A model generated the notes under the pieces. That model had not been told where the DNA came from and searched no databases. It saw nothing but the letters and a program-made list of their open reading frames with translations. Below, in pieces: positions 1 through 26,260 of a DNA stretch of 26,874 bases. The translations under genes and the position numbers were made by a program. The stretch is from assembly GCF_006345805.1 (NCBI RefSeq), contig NW_021834138.1, forward strand, positions 1 through 26,874. The letters are read 5' to 3'. The number at the start of each line of letters is the position of its first letter. Position 1 is the stretch's first letter. Source of the stretch: Octopus sinensis. Lineage: Eukaryota.

Positions 1-269
1 ACTACTCTACTAACTACTAACTACGCCACCACCCTTAATTATTCAACATTACATATGTAAATTTTATTAATTTGCTCCTACACACATACTGTCAATCACT
101 CAGCGAGAGCAGCAGGACAATCTGTGCGCCGACTAGAATAACCACTGTAGAATAACGTGATACACCCTATGAACTTTTGGAATTAAATCAGGTTGCACGT
201 AGAACAGCCACCAGTTAGATATAAACGATTCCACCGTCAGTTTTAAATTGATCCAAATTTAAATCGTCT

Positions 270-456
270 AATTCTTTTCTACTCTAGGCACAAGGCCCGA
301 TATTTTGAGGGAAGGGACCAGTCGATTAGATCGACCCTAGTACGCAATCAACTCCGAAAGGATAAAAGGCAAAGTCGACCTCGGCGGAATTTGAACTCAG
401 AACGTAAAGACAGACGACATATCGCTAAGCATTTCGCACGACGTGCTAACGTTTCT
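270..456 (-). mobile_element. tRNA-derived SINE, family A (octopus-type), head truncated
   Basis: Minus strand has the tRNA-like B-box GTTCTGAGTTCAAATTCC, then GAGGTCGACTTTGCCTTTTATCCTTTCGG and the tail CTTGTGCCTAGAGTAGAAAAG. The same body recurs at 453-651, 25445-25624 and 26049-26260. Confidence 0.85.
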
Positions 457-4124: not shown

Positions 4125-4390
4125 ATATATATATATGTATATATATTTATATATATGTATATATATATATGTATGGTATATATATATATGTGTCTGTGTT
4201 TGTCCCCCCAACATCGCTTGATGCTGGTGTGTTTACATCCCTGTAACTTAGCGGTTAGGCATAAGAGATCGATAGAGTAAGTACTAGGCTTACAAAGAAT
4301 AATTCCTGGGATCGATTTCTTCGACTAAAGGCGATGCTCCAGCATGGCCACAGTCAAATCACTGAATCAAATAAAAGAGTAAAAGAATAC
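3821..4390 (+). mobile_element. tRNA-derived SINE family B (CORE-like), with internal deletion and expanded internal (TA)n
   Basis: Head TGGCTGTGTGGCAAGAAGCTTGCTTCTCAACCACATGGTTCC is joined directly to TCGGGCCGACCAAAGCC, so the B-box and CACCTTGGGCAAG segment are deleted relative to 4408-4515. A TA microsatellite follows at 3924-4189, then the 3' half ending GCTCCAGCATGGCCACAGTCAAATCACTGAATCAAATAAAAGAG. Confidence 0.9.
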
Positions 4391-6939: not shown

Positions 6940-7625
6940 TAGAAACAGTACTGTTCTGTTTTCAGCAATCCTGATATGGCCAATATGGACTGTATCAGTG
7001 ATGTTAATCCTCAACACACTATATGGGACATAACGTTTGGCGCCCCTGATGTCTTGGCGGCAATGAACGAAATTAAACACAATTCAGCAGTAGGTACCGA
7101 AAGGTTCCCTGCTTGTGTCCTGAAGGTGTGTCGACACCAACTTGCATTTCCTCTTGCTGATCTGTGGAGTAAATCACTGGATGCTGGCTATATCCTTGGA
7201 AACTTTCTGTTCCCGTCTGTTCTCCCTGTTTTCTAAAAGGGAAATAAGTCATTAGCAGTGAACTGCCGTCCGATCTCACTCATCTCTCATATCATCAAGG
7301 TATTTGAGAGGGTGGTGAGATCACGGGTAACCCAATTTCGTGACAGCAACAGACTGCTGAACCCCAACCAATATGGGGTCCGTAATGGAAGGAACTGTCT
7401 AACACACCAAAACACATTAGACTAGAAACAGACCCCCAGATGTTCAAGAGGTCTTTGGAAAAATTCCTTAAAAAAATCCCGGATAAACCTCTTACACCCG
7501 GATATATCTTCATGAACAATAACTCTCTCCTCGAGTAGGCCATGTTCGATTCTTGATTTGAATAACTTTGTTAGGTGGTGCCATTAAGTTAAACATGGCC
7601 TGGACCAATACAAGCTGAAACCTGT
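6940..7625 (+). mobile_element. CR1-type LINE fragment: RT N-terminal part joined to C-terminus and 3' UTR
   Basis: QYCSVFSNP...PVF*KGNKSLAVNCRPISLISHIIKVFERVVR...NQYGVRNGRNCLTH runs to about 7407, then jumps to ETDPQMFKRSLEKFLKKIPDKPLTPGY..NNNSLL. The 3' UTR AGGTGGTGCCATTAAGTTAAACATGGCCTGG is shared with 9932-10951. Confidence 0.85.
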
Positions 7626-7637
7626 CCAAATATCAAA

Positions 7638-7638
<1 letters not shown>

Positions 7639-7708
<70 letters not shown>

Positions 7709-7753
7709 CTGTGTGTGTGTGTGTGTATGCATATATATATATCTATATGTATA

Positions 7754-7803
<50 letters not shown>

Positions 7804-7810
7804 ATATATT

Positions 7811-7865
<55 letters not shown>

Positions 7866-7912
7866 ATATATATGTATATGTATATATATGTATATATATA
7901 TATATATATATA
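7639..7912. repeat. (TA)n/(TG)n compound microsatellite
   Basis: Visible. Confidence 0.95.
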
Positions 7913-9651: not shown

Positions 9652-9855
9652 TACACACTCACACGCACACACACACACACATATATATACGTAGATACCT
9701 ATATATATATATATACATGTATATATAGATATATATACATATATATACATACCTATATATATATGTATATATACATATGCATAAATGTATACATATATAT
9801 ATATATAAGTATATATACACATATATATACATACGTATATATACATATATATATG

Positions 9856-9896
<41 letters not shown>

Positions 9897-9930
9897 ACAC
9901 ATATATATATATATATACATATGTATATAT
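9023..9930. repeat. Two compound TA/CA microsatellite blocks (9023-9240, 9610-9930)
   Basis: Visible. Confidence 0.85.
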
Positions 9931-9931
9931 A

Positions 9932-10951
9932 TAACTTAGAATAATAACTTAGAAACGTTTTGGCCAGTATTGGCCCAGGCCATGTCTAACTTAATAGCAC
10001 CACCTGGCGAAGTCTTTCATTCAGGATTGGGCACCAAGGCCCCGAGCAGAGAGTTATTGTTTGCGGAGACATATCCGGGTGTGGGTGGTTTGTCCGAGAC
10101 TGTTTGAAGGAATTTGTCCAAAGATTTCTTGAATTTGTGTGGTCAGTTTCTTTTTTGACGTGTCCTGTGTAATGTTGAAGAGAGCGGGTCCAATTGAGGT
10201 GAAATAGTTGTGCCGTATTGTCGTTATGTGATGCGATTTAGATTTTGTTGTGGACGGATAGCACGTGGTCCAAGCCTTGGATGTATTTTGAAGGTGATGC
10301 CAACATCATTCGGACAGTGATGATGGAATATTTTCCACATCATACAGATAATGTAGCGTTCACGGCGTCGTTGGAGTGAATACAGTTTCAGCTTCTCTAG
10401 TCTAGTCTACCCCAGTGAGTCAAGGTCTGACATGCCATCTATCTTTTTTGTGATTGACCTTTGGGGAGCTCAATTCTCATAATATTTTGTTTTGTGTAGG
10501 GAGACCACAGTGGACAGCAGTATTCAAGGTGGGGTCGGGCAAAAGTGGAGAAGAAAGGATAATAGTGTGGAATCTCTCGATTGGAAGGTTCTGAGATCCA
10601 GGAACACATTCTGCGGGCCATGTCAACTTTGCTGCTTATATGTGTAGCCCAGCTTATGTTGTTGTCCACTGTTACTCCCAAGTCTCTGATGTTGTTGGAT
10701 GCCATGAGAATTTCTCCAGAAGGAAGAGAGTATGGGAGTTTCAGAGCGTCCTCCCTTCCAAAGTGGATCAGTTCGAATTTGTCTTCCTTTAGCAAATGTT
10801 ATTCTTTTCCGCCCATTGGACAACAGCCAGTAGGTCTGACTGAAGGCTTATTCGGTCATCCACGCCATTGATGACCTTCTGGAGCTTGGAATCATCAGCG
10901 AAGTTCTGATGTTACTGTGTTGATGGTGTCAGTAATATCATTTATGTAGAT
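9932..10951 (-). mobile_element. 5'-truncated CR1-type LINE (RT catalytic region to 3' end)
   Basis: Minus strand IYINDITD...FADD (10891-10902) SKLQ...QWAEKN...KFELIHFG...RDLGVTVDNNISWATHI...RPHLEYCCPLWSPY, with several frameshifts. The 3' UTR matches 7573-7610 and the tail is TTCTAAGTTA repeated twice. Confidence 0.92.
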
Positions 10952-11959: not shown

Positions 11960-12990
11960 ATATATAACTTAAATGAACTAAAAGTGTGTTTCTGCCAATA
12001 TTTACATCGGTATGAATGCTCTATAACAGTGTTTACAAGGGGAGTTTAGGAAAAAAGAATAAGAAATAGTTCAGAATTACAGAGAAGACAGAATTCCTTG
12101 CCTTTGTCATAAGGTATCCGTAAATGTAGAGTAATGATTAGAAATTCTTTTAGATAACTGAAAAGATGAGCTTCTTATATAAAAATACTTCATTACCAGA
12201 AGTAATTTTACACTGGTATATAGAATTTTAAATTTTAGAGTTACTTGACATAAACTTGATTCTGTTTTAATTGACTTCAGATACAATAACCTTGTTATTA
12301 ATATTGTTATTAATATTTCTAGGGGGATGGGGGATGGATGGTCTTAGCTAAATTTATGTTAGTATTAGTAAATCTATCAATATTTAACAGGTTAATATTA
12401 CGTGAAGAGATAATTTGTAAAAGATTTTTGTGTTGGAAAAAACAATCCTAACCGTGTGTGAGTTGATAATAGAGTAATACCTAGAATTCTTTGGAAAATT
12501 CCGAATAATAGCTTCACGAAACTGCAACTGGAGATTAGATTTAATTTGCCTCCCGTATGGAATAATTAGCCAAATGGTTTTACTATTAGTTATCTTATTT
12601 CTAGTGTAACTATTTTTGAAAGACGTAGATTTACCTTTAGAACGAAAATAGGGGTTTAAATAAGGGTTATCTCCCTTCTTCTGTTTGGTGTTAACATATA
12701 AATTAGAACTGATATCGTTTATATCCTTACAACTAAATTTCGTATCTCCATTAGTAAAGGTAGAATAAGATTGAATAGAATTAATGTAGGTAACTTTCTC
12801 TGTATAACCTGCTTTAAGTAAGGCGGAGTTATAAAATTCGGCCTTATCATTGAAAATGTCAACATTAGCAGATAACTTAGACAATCTAAATGAAATATTC
12901 TTAACTAAGTTCATAGTAACTGCCTTAGAATGATTACTGAATTTGCTAATATACTTAAGATTGGTCGATGGTTTGTGGTACGGGAAGTAC
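11960..12990 (-). mobile_element. Penelope-like element fragment: RT thumb, linker and GIY-YIG endonuclease
   Basis: YFPYHKPSTNLKYISKFSNHS...ISFRLSKLSAN...IWLIIPYG...RNFPKNSRYYSIINSHTVRIVFSN, then IYQCKIT (12201-12221) / FYIRSSS..SKRISNHYSTF, and C-terminal CLLCNSELFLI (12061-12092). These are PLE linker and GIY-YIG motifs. Confidence 0.85.
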
Positions 12991-13114: not shown

Positions 13115-13370
13115 CAAACTTAAAAAATAAGTTTTGAGGTTGGTGCCCCAGCATGGTCAGAATCTAATGACTGAAACAGAATAATAATAGAATAGTTCCT
13201 CGTAATAGTATATAATATCGGATGTTGTCCAAGGTGTACTATGCCTCGAAAATGTTGGGTTGGGCACAAATGGAAGGCTTTTGTTTATAGTTTTACTGTA
13301 TGAGAATTAATTTGCGACTAAATTATACGTGCTCCAGCATGACCGCAATCAAATGACTGTAACAAGTGCA
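13115..13370 (+). mobile_element. Two short SINE family B 3'-end fragments (13115-13195, 13310-13370)
   Basis: GGTGCCCCAGCATGGTCAGAATCTAATGACTGAAAC and GTGCTCCAGCATGACCGCAATCAAATGACTGTAACAAG. Confidence 0.7.
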
Positions 13371-16711: not shown

Positions 16712-16930
16712 ATGTGTGTCTTTGTTTCTGTGTTTGCCCCTCTCCCACCCCAACGCTTGGTGTGTTTACATCCCCGTAACTTAGCGGTTTGGCAAAAGAA
16801 ACAAATAGAATAAGTACCAGGCTTACAAAATAATAAGCACCGGGGGTGGGGGCGATTCATTCGACTAAAATTCTTAAAGGTGGTGCCCCAGCTTGGCCGC
16901 AGTCTAATGACTGAAACAAATAAAATATAA
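16712..16930 (+). mobile_element. SINE family B 3' half
   Basis: GTGTTTACATCCCCGTAACTTAGCGGTTTGGCAAAAG...AGGTGGTGCCCCAGCTTGGCCGCAGTCTAATGACTGAAAC. Confidence 0.88.
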
Positions 16931-16962
16931 AATATATGTCTGCTCAACTTTCCTTATCCTAA

Positions 16963-17934: not shown

Positions 17935-18842
17935 TATATATATATACATACATACATACATATATATATACATACATGCATATATATATATACATATAAA
18001 TGCATATATAATATACATACATGTATATTACATACATACATACATACATAATACATAATATATATATATATATAATAATTATATATATATAATATAATTA
18101 TATATAATATATATGCGCAATGTATCTATATTTGTACGTACACACGCATACATTGGATATATACATACATACATACAAACATATATATATATGTGTATAT
18201 ATAAATATGCATACATGTACATATATATATATATACAGATATACGCTATCACACTTTCCTTCTCTCTCCACATTCTCTCACAGTCTCTCTTCCTTTCTCT
18301 CTCTCCCCTCTCTCTCTATATATAGTTACAAACACCCACACACATAGTTAACCGTATACTTGTATATATGTATATATATATATATATATACACACATATA
18401 TTTGTGTAATTGAGTTCATTGCTTTACTTTATTTTCTTTTGCTCATAATGATGATTGAATCAATGGAGTTATACTTGGAAAGTCAGTCTCCTTGGTGATT
18501 GCTTAGAAATCGTTAGGTTGTGTACCGAGAAAACCTTAAAATACTCTGCTTCGCGGAAAAAGAGCAAAAAAAAAAAAAAGAAGACAGAAACGAAACTGAC
18601 GCGAGTTCTCCAAATCCTGTCTATTAGTGGCTCAGTGAAGATTTGCAAAACATTCCAAAAGTTCTTCGTCTGAAATTCTTATGTGAATAGATGCACACAC
18701 TTGGGTGTATGCATCGACAGTTCAATCAAGAAGCCAACTCAACCCCATAGTTACAAACACCGGGAATTCTTTTAATTCAAAAAATCTTGTTGCTTTGTAA
18801 GCAATCGGCTTGAAGTTTCTCATGAACTTAAATTAAACTTCC

Positions 18843-19212
18843 TCTCGGTGAGGAATACGGTCCCAAGGATTAGGTCCGGTTTCTGAGCCACTTGCCATTT
18901 CACCATTCGTTTACCGCATGAACTTACATATGCGTGGCTTAAGCTTTGATGCGAAGGTCTTAGGAACAGGACCCAACCACAGGGACCGTATTCCTCACTG
19001 CAAGGAGAGTGGATAACTGTGGCAATTCTATAGCTAATACATGCAACCAAAGCTGCGATCGCAGGTCGCACTAGGACGTTGGGCCGAAAAACGGCGTTCG
19101 GCCGCATTGGTCGCGCTGTAAATATTAGACTGAGCCCGGTGCGTACGGGCTGTTGCAGCCGCTGCCGCGTCCGCGTGCAGATCAAGGCGTGCAGCGGCTT
19201 CACACCCTTCGA
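18843..19212. pseudogene. 18S rRNA-derived fragment with inverted 5' portion
   Basis: Plus 19011-19048 GGATAACTGTGGCAATTCTATAGCTAATACATGCAACC matches the conserved eukaryotic 18S block. Minus 18930-18949 TCAAAGCTTAAGCCACGCAT and minus 18884-18904 GGTGAAATGGCAAGTGGCTCA match the 18S segments immediately 5' of it. A 17-bp inverted duplication lies at 18848-18864 and 18982-18998. Confidence 0.85.
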
Positions 19213-19384
19213 TATCTTTTGTAAACACCTAATAACTTATAAACATCTAATTATTAAAGCGGAAAAATCATCAGAAAAGCCATTTCGATTAAGTTTTTCA
19301 TATAAGTATATGTGTGTGTACGTGTGTGTGTGTATGTGTGTGTATGAATGTGTTTGTATGTGTGTGTGTGAGTGTGTGTGTATG

Positions 19385-19590
19385 TGTGCGTGCTTTTTGT
19401 GTCTGTTTGTGTCCCCATCACTACTTGACAACCGGTGTTGGTGTGTTTACGTCCTCGTAACTCACCGGTTCGACAAAAGAGACCACTAGAATATGTATCA
19501 GGCTTTTAGGGTTTATTCGTTCGACTTAACTTCTTCAAGGTGGTACCCCTGCGTAGCCGTAGTCTAATGACTTAAACAAGTAAAAAATCA
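19385..19590 (+). mobile_element. SINE family B 3' half, preceded by (GT)n
   Basis: CTTGACAACCGGTGTTGGTGTGTTTACGTCCTCGTAAC...AGGTGGTACCCCTGCGTAGCCGTAGTCTAATGACTTAAAC. Confidence 0.85.
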
Positions 19591-19758
19591 AGAGATTAAA
19601 TGATTAAAAGATTATGGAAAGCTAACTCCGTTTAAATGAGTAACTGATATTTTTCTGTCATAAACAAGAGACAGCTTTCATTCAGCCACAAGATGTTATT
19701 CAGATTGAATTACATACAAAGTTACTTATTACTTTTCGGGGTTTTGCTCAGAAGAAAA

Positions 19759-20225: not shown

Positions 20226-20342
20226 AAAGAACGCTAAAAATGTATAAACGAACCACTGGCATCAATGTTATTTAATAGTATGTAATTTCTATGAATCTTT
20301 GTATAAAACTAATTCGACAGTGAGGGCTGTAAGATCTGTATT

Positions 20343-20470
20343 TTTTTTTTGTTCTTGCTTGTTTCAGTTATTGGACTGCGGCCATGCTGGTGCATTACCT
20401 TGAACGCTTCAGTCGAACAAATCAGCCTCAGTACTTTTTTTTGTCAAAGTCTGGTACTTATTCTATCGTT
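20343..20470 (-). mobile_element. SINE family B 3'-end fragment
   Basis: Plus GTTTCAGTTATTGGACTGCGGCCATGCTGG is the reverse complement of the family B tail. Confidence 0.75.
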
Positions 20471-24484: not shown

Positions 24485-24995
24485 GGGTGGATGTGCTTAT
24501 CTCCCTTGTTTGAAAACTTAAGGACACAGAGCACTTGTATCACATAGCCAACTGGAACGATGTTTCCTGGGGCTAAATAGCAGTAGCATTCTTCCTTTTC
24601 ATGGGACTGCCACATGAAGTTGGTAACAAACTATCTCTTTATCGCGCTGCTACTGTATACGTCCCTCTGAGAGATTTAGAAATGCAATATTTCTAATTTT
24701 GTAGGTCAGTGAATTTATTTCACTTGAAATTCTATAAGTTTTCAAAGGCGAATAAGCATCAAGAGCTAGGAAAGCAAGTTACTACAGACTGATGAAGAAT
24801 AATAACTCTGAAACTAGTCTCTGGATACTGGCTTTTCTGGGTGGAGGTGCTTATCTCCCCTGTTTAAAATCTTAAGGACACAGAACGCTTGTATCACATA
24901 GCCAACTGGAAACGATGTTCCCTGGGGCTAAATAGCAGTAGCATTCTTCCCTTTCATGAGACTGCCACATTAAGTTGGCAACAAGCCATCACTTT
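24485..24995 (+). mobile_element. Non-coding hammerhead-bearing retroelement (retrozyme/pLTR-like), about 1.4 monomers of 354 nt
   Basis: Direct repeats 24485-24640 and 24839-24995 (14 substitutions and 1 indel by my count), an 11-bp flanking duplication ATTCAAGAACG (24474-24484, 24996-25006), a hammerhead at 24785-24823, and no ORF. Confidence 0.75.
24785..24823 (+). ncRNA. Minimal type I hammerhead ribozyme, catalytic core intact
   Basis: CAGA-CTGATGA-AGA-ATAATAAC-TCT-GAAA-CTAG-TC-TCTG: stem I CAGA/TCTG, stem II AGA/TCT, palindromic stem III CTAG, and GUC cleavage triplet with cut after 24819. Confidence 0.85.
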
Positions 24996-25364
24996 ATTCA
25001 AGAACGATTTTACACCTACTATTCAGCGCTTTGTCATTTAAAGTTTTGTCTACTTCGAGTTCCACTGCTAAAGAGAATTTACTATATATTTCTAAACCTA
25101 ATCCTGATACAAGTATTTGTGTGCAAGACAGAATGAACAGTCAAATTATATAGCATAACAACACTTCAACAGTGTATTGGGTATTCAGTCAAAACAGTTT
25201 GAAGCAGGTATATGATAATCGATCAAATGGTTTAACGTCTGTCTTTTACATAAATGAATTTTTATCGATTTATTTTTGGTTGAAAAATTTCATAGTTTTT
25301 GCTCTTTGATTGTTATTTTAAATATAAACTTAATATCTGCATTTTGAGATTCTTTGCATCATCT

Positions 25365-25440: not shown

Positions 25441-25444
25441 TTTA

Positions 25445-25624
25445 AAATGCTTAGTGGCATTTCGTTCGTCTTCACGTTCTGTGTTCAAATTCCGCCGAGG
25501 TTGACTTTGCCTTTCATTCTTTCGAGGTCGATGACATAAGTACCAGTTGTGCACTGATGTCTATGTAATCGACTTACCCCCTTACGAGAACTTGTTGGCC
25601 TTGAGCCAAAATTTGAAACTATTG
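25445..25624 (+). mobile_element. SINE family A, 5'-truncated
   Basis: AAATGCTTAGTGGCATTTCG...GTTCAAATTCCGCCGAGGTTGACTTTGCCTTTCATTCTTTCGAGGTCGAT...GGCCTTGAGCCAAAATTTGAAAC. Confidence 0.85.
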
Positions 25625-26049: not shown

Positions 26050-26260
26050 TTCAAATTTTTGCCACACAGGCAGCTTGGGGGAAGGGATTAAGTCGATTAC
26101 ATCGACCCCAGTGTTTTCACTGGTACTTAATTTATCGATCGCAAGAGGATGAAATGTAAAATCGACCTCGGCGGAATTTGAACTCGGAACGTAGAGACGG
26201 GCGAAATACTGCTATTCATTTCGCCCGTTTCTCGCTAACGTTTCTACCATCTCGCCACCT
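26049..26260 (-). mobile_element. SINE family A, near full length
   Basis: Plus ATCGACCCCAGTG...TGGTACTTAATTTATCGATC...ATCGACCTCGGCGGAATTTGAACTCGGAACGT...GCTAACGTTTCTACCATCTCGCCACC. Confidence 0.88.

What the first reader, a model, noticed from the sequence alone, without database searches (positions are those of the whole stretch)
18843..19212. 18S rRNA retrocopy with twin-priming-type 5' inversion
Seen: the first approximately 140 nt of 18S lie on the minus strand (18981 down to 18843), head to head with the continuation on the plus strand (18982-19212), and the 17-mer GGGACCGTATTCCTCAC is present in both halves. The inverted half starts at TGTGGTTGGGTCCTG, resembling the mature 18S start (ACCTGGTTGATCCTG), and no upstream spacer sequence is attached. 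Established: twin priming (Ostertag and Kazazian 2001, L1) leaves an inverted 5' segment whose 3' end abuts the flank, often with a short duplication. Inference: a LINE RT copied a mature rRNA fragment by twin priming, unusual for a non-polyadenylated template and outside mammalian L1. If multi-copy, it would be an 18S-derived SINE-like family.
Basis: partly seen in the sequence, partly recalled or inferred. Interest (0 to 1): 0.72.

Follow-up and report, generated by a model that had tools for sequence, protein, structure and literature searches.

The report
Decayed, half-inverted 18S rRNA pseudogene fragment
A stray, mutated copy of about the first 200-260 bases of the small-subunit ribosomal RNA lies alone in AT-rich repeat-filled DNA with its first part flipped, which fits copying from RNA by a retrotransposon enzyme but cannot be proven from this one old locus.

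Summary
The sequence feature is real. A GC-rich island at 18840-19215 derives from the 5' part of eukaryotic 18S rRNA. One piece lies on the minus strand: 18S about 32/37-142 is firm, 18S 1-31 is weak. One piece lies on the plus strand: 18S 118-190 is firm, and it may run on to about 260. They are head to head and share a 25-nt overlap that holds the perfect 17-mer. No other rDNA occurs in the 26.9-kb window.

This layout is what twin priming predicts. The classical retroposition marks are missing, though. No target-site duplication rises above chance, and there is no A-tail or LINE tail. No second copy was found, and no genome of the host animal could be searched.

The claim that the inverted half starts at the mature 18S 5' end is weak: those bases add 1.6 bits, with p about 0.013. 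It is also confounded, because the same 23 nt extend the inverted repeat to 48 nt at 77%. That extension is itself far from chance, and the locus folds as a long imperfect hairpin (z = -6).

The copy is old, about 14% diverged at conserved positions. My best reading (0.45) is a tailless, 5'-inverted rRNA retropseudogene whose hairpin arms were later reshaped. A DNA-level rearrangement is the main rival (0.3). This is a new member of a known kind and of modest interest.

The parts
18840..18864 (-). Left arm: reverse complement of 18S about 118-142. Holds the reverse complement of the 17-mer at 18848-18864.
   Evidence: Exact 17-mer. 22/25 identical to 18982-19006. The GC-rich island starts at 18840. 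Extension to the left of 18840 is no better than shuffled sequence.
18865..18958 (-). Body of the inverted piece: 18S about 32/37-117. 18865-18887 also forms the left arm extension.
   Evidence: nhmmer 18949->18859 = 18S 37-125, E 6e-8. cmscan 18954->18830 = model 32-158, 16.4 bits. 40/50 matches at columns conserved in at least 90% of references.
18959..18981 (-). Ambiguous 23 nt. Either the reverse complement of 18S about 3-23 (the RNA's 5' end), or a right-arm extension complementary to 18865-18887, or a mosaic of both.
   Evidence: Adds 1.6 bits to the CM score. Collinear similarity to the 18S 5' end has p about 0.013. 15/23 complementary to the other arm, reached by 2 of 53,702 window 23-mers and by 4 of 200,000 simulations.
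18982..19006 (+). Right arm: sense 18S about 118-142. Holds the 17-mer at 18982-18998.
   Evidence: Global alignment to real 18S places GGGACCGTATTCC on AGATCGTACATTCC.
19007..19062 (+). Well-preserved 18S 138-190 (GGATAACTGTGGCAATTCTATAGCTAATACATGCAACCAAAGC...).
   Evidence: nhmmer E 5e-11. cmscan 21 bits, model 138-173. 36/38 matches at columns conserved in at least 90% of references.
19063..19215 (+). GC-rich continuation (62% GC, CpG o/e 1.3), presumed to be the species-specific V2 expansion region of 18S. Not verifiable here.
   Evidence: Sharp composition boundary at about 19215. Weak collinear match GCGCTGTAAATATTAGA to 18S about 201-218 (p 0.08). The alternative CM alignment to model 293 adds no score. 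The RNA fold is no better than shuffles (z -1.1).
19216..19238 (+). Tentative last 18S-derived bases: TTTTGTAAACACCTAATAACTT against 18S about 243-264, TTTTGGTGACTCTGAATAACTT.
   Evidence: Local alignment score is reached by 3% of window segments. Nothing beyond is significant (p 0.24).
18840..19006 (.). The whole inverted-repeat unit: 48-nt arms at 77% and a 71-nt spacer. It forms a long imperfect hairpin.
   Evidence: The single-strand DNA fold of 18830-19016 gives -37.3 kcal/mol, z = -6.1, with 0 of 200 shuffles as stable. It is about 10 kcal/mol more stable than the same arms around real 18S 1-117.

Best explanation
This is an old, solitary, non-functional copy of about the first 200-260 nt of 18S rRNA, made from RNA by a LINE reverse transcriptase at a chromosomal nick.

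Inferred steps:
1. First-strand cDNA was primed inside the rRNA, with no poly(A) (a 'tailless' retropseudogene). It ran leftwards from about position 260 and stopped near position 118.
2. The other DNA end of the break primed a second cDNA on the same RNA near position 142. That cDNA ran to, or close to, the RNA's 5' end.
3. That cDNA's 3' end then jumped onto the 3' end of the first cDNA. This is twin priming resolved by a template jump. It gives the reverse complement of 1..142 followed by sense 118..260, with a 25-nt duplicated overlap.
4. The 25-bp inverted repeat then let the locus fold as a hairpin. Repeated intra-hairpin templated repair (quasi-palindrome or template-switch mutation) made the neighbouring bases complementary too. 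This lengthened the stem to about 48+ bp and blurred the 18S identity of positions 1-36 and 100-117.

Shown directly: the 18S origin, the two orientations, the overlap, the lack of any other rDNA, the long hairpin and the age.
Inferred: the RNA intermediate, the enzyme and the order of events.
For: - 18S homology of both pieces, in opposite orientation and collinear with 18S.
- The breakpoints in 18S coordinates lie next to each other with a short duplication: 118-142, 22/25 identical including 17 perfect.
- There is no ETS, no later 18S and no 5.8S/28S anywhere in 26.9 kb. This is an isolated piece, not an rDNA unit.
- The inverted piece ends within a few nt of where the mature 18S 5' end should lie. 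There are 32 nt upstream of TCAAAG against 36 expected, and TGGTTGGGTCCTG resembles TGGTTGATCCTG (p about 0.013; cmscan aligns from model position 1).
- The two pieces are compatible with one age: 80% and 95% identity at conserved columns, Fisher p = 0.06.
- The stem extension is non-random, and 12 of 20 changes in the two arm extensions go towards the partner arm (p 0.013, post hoc).
- Precedents exist. Tailless retropseudogenes made by internal priming include 18S and 28S fragments (PMC5322556). Antisense 5S and tRNA pieces whose 5' start abuts the junction are attributed to twin priming (PMC13174262). 5'-inverted trans-mobilised retrocopies are a recognised class (PMC2912911). Template switching creates and maintains hairpins (PMC8794818).
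Against: - No target-site duplication: the best flank repeat scores no better than shuffled flanks (p 0.5).
- No A-tail or LINE-derived tail follows the sense piece. The right flank is AT-rich unique DNA, then a (TG)n tract and an unrelated SINE.
- The 5'-end assignment adds only 1.6 bits, and identity to 18S drops sharply upstream of position 37.
- If 18959-18981 is really a sense copy of 18S 95-117, the inverted piece is 5'-truncated and the main argument for an RNA template is lost.
- The proposed later hairpin reshaping is an extra assumption, needed to reconcile two non-random signals in 23 nt.
- The species' own 18S/ETS, other copies, the empty site and read support could not be examined.
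Confidence: 0.45

Rival explanations
1. DNA-level origin. Either a fragment of rDNA (or an earlier collinear 18S pseudogene) was captured at a double-strand break. Or, at or after capture, a replication or repair template switch (short-range template-switch mutation, MMBIR, or a staggered-break inversion) replaced 18S 1-117 with the reverse complement of 1-142. No reverse transcriptase is needed.
For: - No TSD and no tail.
- The locus is a strong hairpin (z -6.1), and the arms carry signs of templated copying between strands. Template switching has therefore probably acted here at least once.
- Template-switch events are known to create in-place inversions and hairpins (PMC8794818, PMC7954356).
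- Degraded rDNA pieces outside the arrays are known (PMC5381670).
Against: - One breakpoint must fall by chance within a few nt (or within 37 nt) of the 18S 5' end, with no ETS carried along.
- No other rDNA is nearby.
- An inverted tract of about 142 nt is long for a short-range template-switch mutation. This rests on my own knowledge of that literature, not on a test.
Confidence: 0.3
2. Same event type but different anatomy. The overlap is 48 nt, not 25. The plus-strand piece starts at 18959 (18S about 95). The minus-strand piece is 5'-truncated at 18S about 24-37. The likeness of 18959-18981 to the 18S 5' end is coincidence.
For: - 15/23 identity between 18959-18981 and the sense reading of 18865-18887 is far above chance.
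- The 48-nt arms are 77% identical. That is what two copies each about 14% diverged should show.
- nhmmer alignments of the minus piece start at 18S 35-37.
- The 5' bases add only 1.6 bits.
Against: - 18959-18981 is only about 28% identical to real 18S 95-117, while the adjoining 138-190 is 95% identical. The eight or so states it shares with the other arm are all non-consensus (my reading of the alignments).
- So the source would have to be abnormal at one of the most conserved 18S stretches, or the arms must have been homogenised later anyway.
- The collinear 5'-end similarity (p 0.013) would be chance.
Confidence: 0.3
3. The block is one member of a multi-copy repeat: an 18S-derived SINE-like or hairpin family, or part of a larger transposable element that captured rDNA.
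For: - The genome around it is packed with repeats. There are five copies of one SINE-like family within 27 kb.
- rRNA-derived SINEs exist, from 5S and from 28S (SINE28) (PMC4994717).
- The octopus repeat annotation lists about 893 families of unclassified SINEs (PMC13282606). This is relevant only if my identification of the organism from memory is right.
Against: - A single copy in the window, with unique flanks.
- No LINE-type tail and no tRNA/5S-type promoter region.
- No relatives among predicted proteins or in three sequence collections. Those collections are not expected to hold the host genome, so this is weak evidence.
Confidence: 0.1
4. Assembly or sequencing artefact: a chimeric or fold-back read joined in the assembly.
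For: Inverted junctions are a known artefact class (own knowledge). Read support was not available.
Against: - Artefactual fold-backs give perfect palindromes of the true gene. Here the arms are only 77% identical.
- The 18S copy is about 14% diverged from conserved positions.
- It is embedded in unique AT-rich flanks on both sides.
Confidence: 0.03

Closest known systems
Tailless retropseudogenes (internal priming by LINE-1; Schmitz/Noll et al., PMC5322556)
   Same: A copy of an abundant non-polyadenylated RNA, 3'-truncated inside the RNA and lacking an A-tail. 18S and 28S fragments are among the rare reported sources.
   Different: The reported rRNA cases are 5'-truncated, flanked by TSDs and found in therian mammals with L1. 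This one keeps or nearly keeps the 5' end, has an inverted 5' part, shows no detectable TSD and lies in a non-mammalian, probably molluscan, genome.
Twin priming / 5'-inverted L1 and retrocopy insertions (Ostertag and Kazazian 2001; PMC2912911)
   Same: An inverted 5' segment abuts a sense 3' segment. The breakpoints are adjacent in template coordinates with a short duplication.
   Different: The classic cases end in poly(A) and have TSDs, and the template is L1 or an mRNA. Here the template is rRNA, the tail and TSD are absent or eroded, and the enzyme is unknown.
Antisense 5S rRNA/tRNA-LINE-1 chimeric insertions (PMC13174262)
   Same: A small structural RNA lies in antisense with its 5' start at the junction. 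These are explained by a second priming event at the other end of the break.
   Different: In those chimeras the sense partner is a LINE-1 3' end. Here both partners come from the same 18S region and no LINE sequence is attached.
SINE28 and other rRNA-derived SINEs (PMC4994717; 5S-derived SINE3)
   Same: Ribosomal RNA sequence dispersed outside the rDNA by retroposition.
   Different: SINEs are multi-copy, have a promoter-bearing head and a LINE-recognised tail. None of that is shown here.
Degraded rDNA pseudogenes / orphons outside the arrays (PMC5381670)
   Same: A decayed rRNA-gene sequence at a non-rDNA locus.
   Different: Those are DNA-level copies that include spacers and IGS and are often near full length. 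This is a piece of about 400 bp of mature-rRNA sequence only.
Template-switch (quasi-palindrome) mutations that create and maintain hairpins (PMC8794818, PMC7954356)
   Same: Clusters of changes make two nearby stretches reverse-complementary, and a stem grows from an existing inverted repeat.
   Different: Those were shown by comparing related genomes. Here it is inferred from one locus and a consensus, post hoc.

Membership tests
Eukaryotic SSU rRNA-derived sequence (Rfam RF01960) | Significant sequence/structure match to the 18S model | tested here: met
   cmscan gives 21.0 bits (E 8.5e-4) and 18.0 bits (E 7e-3) on a 401-nt stretch. nhmmer with profiles of real 18S gives E 5e-11 and 6e-8 over the whole window.
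Eukaryotic SSU rRNA-derived sequence (Rfam RF01960) | Functional gene: reaches the gathering score, is full length, and keeps its helices | tested here: not met
   No hit at gathering threshold. Only 18S about 1-260 is present. Non-canonical pairs occur in helices of the 5' domain (NC line).
LINE-mediated retrocopy / retropseudogene | Target-site duplication flanking the insert | tested here: inconclusive
   The best direct repeats between 18780-18850 and 19200-19300 are 7-10 nt and no better than shuffles (p 0.5). An old TSD may have decayed.
LINE-mediated retrocopy / retropseudogene | 3' poly(A) or LINE-derived 3' tail | tested here: not met
   The sequence after 19215/19238 is AT-rich unique DNA without an A-run. 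The (TG)n tract at 19300-19395 belongs to the head of the next SINE copy.
LINE-mediated retrocopy / retropseudogene | Corresponds to the processed RNA only: starts at the mature 5' end with no spacer | tested here: inconclusive
   No other rDNA is present. Support for the 5' end is weak (1.6 bits, p 0.013) and confounded by the inverted-repeat extension. The species' ETS is not available.
LINE-mediated retrocopy / retropseudogene | An empty orthologous or allelic site exists | not testable with these tools
   No genome of the host or its relatives is in the searchable collections.
Twin-priming 5' inversion | An inverted 5' segment directly abuts the sense 3' segment of the same template | tested here: met
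   Minus-strand 18S about 32-142 lies next to plus-strand 18S 118-190.
Twin-priming 5' inversion | Breakpoints adjacent in template coordinates, with a small duplication or deletion | tested here: met
   A 25-nt overlap (18S 118-142), 22/25 identical. The overlap is 48 nt under the alternative anatomy.
Twin-priming 5' inversion | Both segments are the same age (a single event) | tested here: inconclusive
   40/50 against 36/38 matches at conserved columns, Fisher p 0.06. At the 80% threshold p is 0.17.
SINE (18S-derived) | Many dispersed copies | not testable with these tools
   One copy in the window. Nothing was found in the metagenome, prokaryote-genome or viral collections or in protein space, but these do not cover the host genome.
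SINE (18S-derived) | Composite build: promoter-bearing head plus a LINE-related tail | tested here: not met
   No tail. No tRNA-like head. No similarity of the flanks to other repeats in the window.
rDNA unit fragment / orphon (DNA-level copy) | Carries spacer (ETS/ITS/IGS) or neighbouring rRNA genes | tested here: not met
   A full-length 18S profile finds nothing else at E<=100. Rfam finds no 5.8S or LSU. The ETS itself could not be tested without the species' sequence.

The most novel reading that the evidence does not exclude
The locus is not a lone accident. It would be either one of several 5'-inverted 18S copies, showing that a non-mammalian LINE (in a cephalopod, if my identification of the SINE is right) carries out twin priming and end-to-end template jumps on rRNA. 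Or it would be the seed of an rRNA-derived hairpin repeat whose stem has been actively lengthened by template-switch mutation and which may be processed into small RNAs.
Probability: 0.1. Interest if true: 0.6.

Novelty: new member of a known kind. Interest (0 to 1): 0.3.

Why it matters
If the RNA route is right, this would be a rare example, outside mammals, of a LINE enzyme copying ribosomal RNA and leaving the 5'-inversion scar known from human L1. That would bear on how general twin priming and tailless internal priming are.

The locus also shows how a short inverted duplication may grow into a long hairpin by templated mutation. As a single old copy with no function in sight, it has little wider consequence. 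It is mainly an annotation item: an rRNA pseudogene fragment that could mislead rDNA or contamination screens.

Tried and rejected
- Rfam on the whole window at gathering score, and on 1 kb at E<=10, found no SSU hit. The hit appears only on stretches of about 400 nt or less.
- I looked for a longer duplication to the left of 18840, where the inverted piece would continue into 18S 143-195. It is no better than shuffled sequence, so I rejected it.
- Candidate TSDs were TTTGTAAGCA/TTTGTAAACA, AACTTA..TAAAC and AAGTTTCTCA/AAGTTTTTCA. All are at chance level.
- I first thought the minus piece was much more decayed than the plus piece, implying two events or hypermutation. A careful count at conserved columns gives p 0.06-0.17, so I dropped this.
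- Intact rRNA-like stems in the GC-rich part would have been a sign of youth. The fold z-score is only -1.1, so I dropped this too.
- An alternative covariance-model alignment of the plus piece to 18S 293 adds no score.
- Continuation of 18S beyond the downstream SINE or elsewhere in the window: none.
- Search for other copies or the species' 18S. The ORF across the junction and a sense-frame peptide of the GC-rich part have no protein relatives. The junction 22-mer is absent from metagenomes. A 24-mer of the plus piece is absent from prokaryote genomes and viral contigs.
- Attempts to identify the organism. One window ORF is not on record. The relatives of the LINE-like ORF sit on short contigs for which the tool gave only accession numbers, no organism.
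- tRNA scan: nothing.

Full report
**What is there**

The window is 33% GC and full of microsatellites and dispersed repeats. At 18840-19215 sits a sharply bounded GC-rich island of 45-72% GC. The 17-mer GGGACCGTATTCCTCAC occurs once on the plus strand (18982-18998) and once as its reverse complement (18848-18864), and nowhere else.

Rfam finds no family at gathering score in the whole window, and no SSU match when 1 kb is searched at E<=10. On a 401-nt stretch the eukaryotic SSU model matches twice. Plus strand 19008-19043 matches model 138-173 (21 bits, E 8.5e-4). Minus strand 18981->18830 matches model 1-158 (18 bits, E 7e-3).

To get an independent yardstick I fetched 112 real 18S loci from metagenomes with a degenerate pattern and built profiles from them. 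nhmmer with all filters off finds exactly two hits in the whole window. Plus strand 19009-19062 matches 18S 138-190 (E 5e-11). Minus strand 18949->18859 matches 18S 37-125 (E 6e-8). A full-length 18S profile finds nothing more, even at E<=100. So the 18S origin, the opposite orientations and the isolation from any other rDNA are established.

**Anatomy in 18S coordinates**

Global alignments to real 18S place the plus-strand piece from about position 118 (GGGACCGTATTCC on AGATCGTACATTCC) through the highly conserved GGATAACTGTGG.AATTCTA.AGCTAATACATGC block to about 190.

Further right the sequence stays GC-rich to about 19215 and cannot be assigned without the species' own 18S. Two collinear weak matches suggest it continues through an expanded V2 to about 18S 264. 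These are GCGCTGTAAATATTAGA (p 0.08) and TTTTGTAAACACCTAATAACTT at 19217-19238 (p 0.03). An alternative covariance-model alignment to position 293 adds no score.

The minus-strand piece runs from 18S about 142 at 18840 to at least 18S 32-37 at 18949-18954. A continuation to the left of 18840 is no better than shuffled sequence. The two pieces therefore overlap by 25 nt of 18S (118-142), with 22/25 identical and 17 in a row perfect.

**The contested 5' end**

I tested this in three ways:
- cmscan aligns 18981 to model position 1. Removing 18959-18981 lowers the score only from 18.0 to 16.4 bits.
- nhmmer does not include these bases in its alignment.
- The local similarity (TGGTTGGGTCCTG against TGGTTGATCCTG), at the offset expected from collinearity, is reached by 1.3% of random window segments.

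So the similarity is suggestive, not strong.

The same 23 nt are also 15/23 complementary to 18865-18887, which extends the inverted repeat to 48 nt at 77%. Only 2 of 53,702 23-mers in the window reach that level. Starting from the reverse complement of consensus 18S 1-23 with the observed number of random changes, only 4 of 200,000 simulations do.

Read the other way, as a sense copy of 18S 95-117, these bases are at random-level identity to real 18S. They share with the other arm only non-consensus states. That is hard to square with the 95% identity of the adjoining 138-190 block.

Both arm extensions look like mosaics of the two ancestral sequences. Twelve of 20 changes go towards the partner arm (binomial p 0.013). 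This is a post hoc count on my own alignment, with the binomial figure.

The region folds as a long imperfect hairpin. The single-strand DNA fold has z = -6.1, with 0 of 200 shuffles as stable. The fold is about 10 kcal/mol more stable than the same arms placed around real 18S 1-117. The simplest reconciliation is that a 25-bp inverted repeat was there first and the stem was lengthened later by templated copying between the arms. That process is described for quasi-palindromes and hairpins (PMC8794818, PMC7954356). This step is inference.

**Age and unity**

At columns conserved in at least 90% of the reference 18S genes:

| Piece | Matches | Identity |
|---|---|---|
| Minus strand (18S 37-110) | 40/50 | 80% |
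| Plus strand (18S 139-188) | 36/38 | 95% |

The difference is not significant (Fisher p 0.06; p 0.17 at the 80% threshold). A single event is therefore not excluded. My earlier impression of two ages was dropped.

Overall divergence is about 14%, so the copy is old and clearly non-functional. Helices of the 5' domain contain non-canonical pairs.

**Marks of retroposition**

There is no A-run or LINE-like tail after the sense piece. About 60-90 nt of unique AT-rich DNA follows. Then come a TG-rich tract (24-nt period, 19309-19388) and a copy of a SINE-like family that has five copies in the window. The TG-rich tract belongs to the head of that family.

The best direct repeats between the two flanks are 7-10 nt and no better than shuffled flanks (p 0.5). 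No target-site duplication can be claimed.

I found no other copy in the window. There are no protein-space relatives of ORFs crossing the junction or the GC-rich part. The junction and a plus-piece 24-mer have no match in metagenome, prokaryote-genome or viral collections. These collections are not expected to contain the host genome, so copy number remains untested.

**Organism**

No tool result names it. From memory, the SINE at 19398-19600 (core ...GGTGCCCCAGCATGGCCGCAGTCTAATGACTGAAACAAGTAAAA) is the abundant octopus SINE. This is a lead, not a test.

If it is right, recently active LINE clades in Octopus vulgaris include RTE, Dong-R4, CR1 and also L1-Tx1 (PMC13282606). An L1-type enzyme would therefore not be out of reach.

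**Mechanism**

The layout is the one predicted by twin priming: the reverse complement of the 5' segment, then the sense 3' segment, with breakpoints adjacent in template coordinates and a short duplication. If the inverted piece does reach the RNA's 5' end, the junction (position about 3 joined to position 118) is what an end-of-template jump onto the 3' end of the stalled first cDNA would give.

The missing A-tail fits internal priming, as in tailless retropseudogenes. These include rare 18S and 28S fragments in human (PMC5322556). Antisense 5S and tRNA pieces whose 5' start lies at the junction are likewise attributed to twin priming (PMC13174262). 5'-inverted trans-mobilised retrocopies are a recognised class (PMC2912911). 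I give this reading 0.45.

The main rival (0.3) is a DNA-level event. That would be capture of an rDNA or pseudogene fragment, with a replication or repair template switch producing the in-place inversion. It needs no missing TSD or tail to be explained away, and it fits the evidence that template switching has acted on this hairpin. It does require a breakpoint to fall by chance at, or within 37 nt of, the 18S 5' end, with no spacer.

A multi-copy family (0.1) and an assembly artefact (0.03; the arms are only 77% identical and the copy is diverged) are less likely.

**Verdict**

- The feature is a new member of known kinds: an rRNA-derived pseudogene fragment, probably a tailless 5'-inverted retrocopy.
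- Interest is modest (0.3). It would rise if a genome-wide search showed recurrent 5'-inverted rRNA copies, or an empty site with a TSD.

Noticed in passing
window 4189-4390(+), 16723-16934(+), 19398-19600(+), 20338-20468(-), 13141-13194(+): Five copies of one SINE-like family (about 70-85% alike). Each has a TG-rich head, a conserved core ...GGTGCCCCAGCATGGCCGCAGTCTAATGACTGAAACAA and an A-rich/(TAAAAG)-like tail. ARAGORN finds no tRNA in it. From memory it resembles the abundant octopus SINE. One copy lies about 90-190 nt downstream of the 18S block.
   Followed up: partly
window 7424-7891 and 9679-10151: A pair of inverted copies, 481 nt at 77% identity and about 1.8 kb apart. Probably two copies of a transposable element in opposite orientation.
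   Followed up: no
window 10439-10795 (-): A 118-aa ORF resembling the C-terminal region of non-LTR (LINE) reverse transcriptases (own reading). It has three relatives at 31-67% identity on short contigs, identified only by accession, and no Pfam domain.
   Followed up: partly
window 347-454, 528-635, 25444-25550(-), 26122-26249; also 24485-24642 / 24839-24997: Further short dispersed or tandem repeat families (81-91% identity) at both ends of the window.
   Followed up: no
window 12384-12914 (-): A 176-aa ORF, the only long ORF not made of microsatellite. It has no Pfam hit and is not on record in the contig index. It is possibly a transposable-element remnant.
   Followed up: partly
window 18884-18890 and 18934-18940: Inside the inverted 18S piece, the natural complement GCCAT/ATGGC (18S about 48-52 and 92-96) has become GCCAC/GTGGC. 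This double change keeps the pairing in the hairpin fold. The two stretches are not partners in the real rRNA structure (own knowledge). The change fits arm-to-arm templated mutation, or chance.
   Followed up: partly
window 18565-18583: An A-run (AAAAAGAGCAAAAAAAAAAAAAAGAAG) about 260 nt upstream of the 18S block, on the plus strand. It may be the tail of an unrelated retroelement. Its position and orientation do not fit a tail for the 18S copy.
   Followed up: no
whole window: Extreme microsatellite load. Tandem Repeats Finder lists 28 rows, some of them overlapping descriptions of one array, of (TA)n, (TATG)n, (TG)n, (AAT)n and (CCT)n. These generate most of the long 'ORFs' in the mechanical list.
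   Followed up: no
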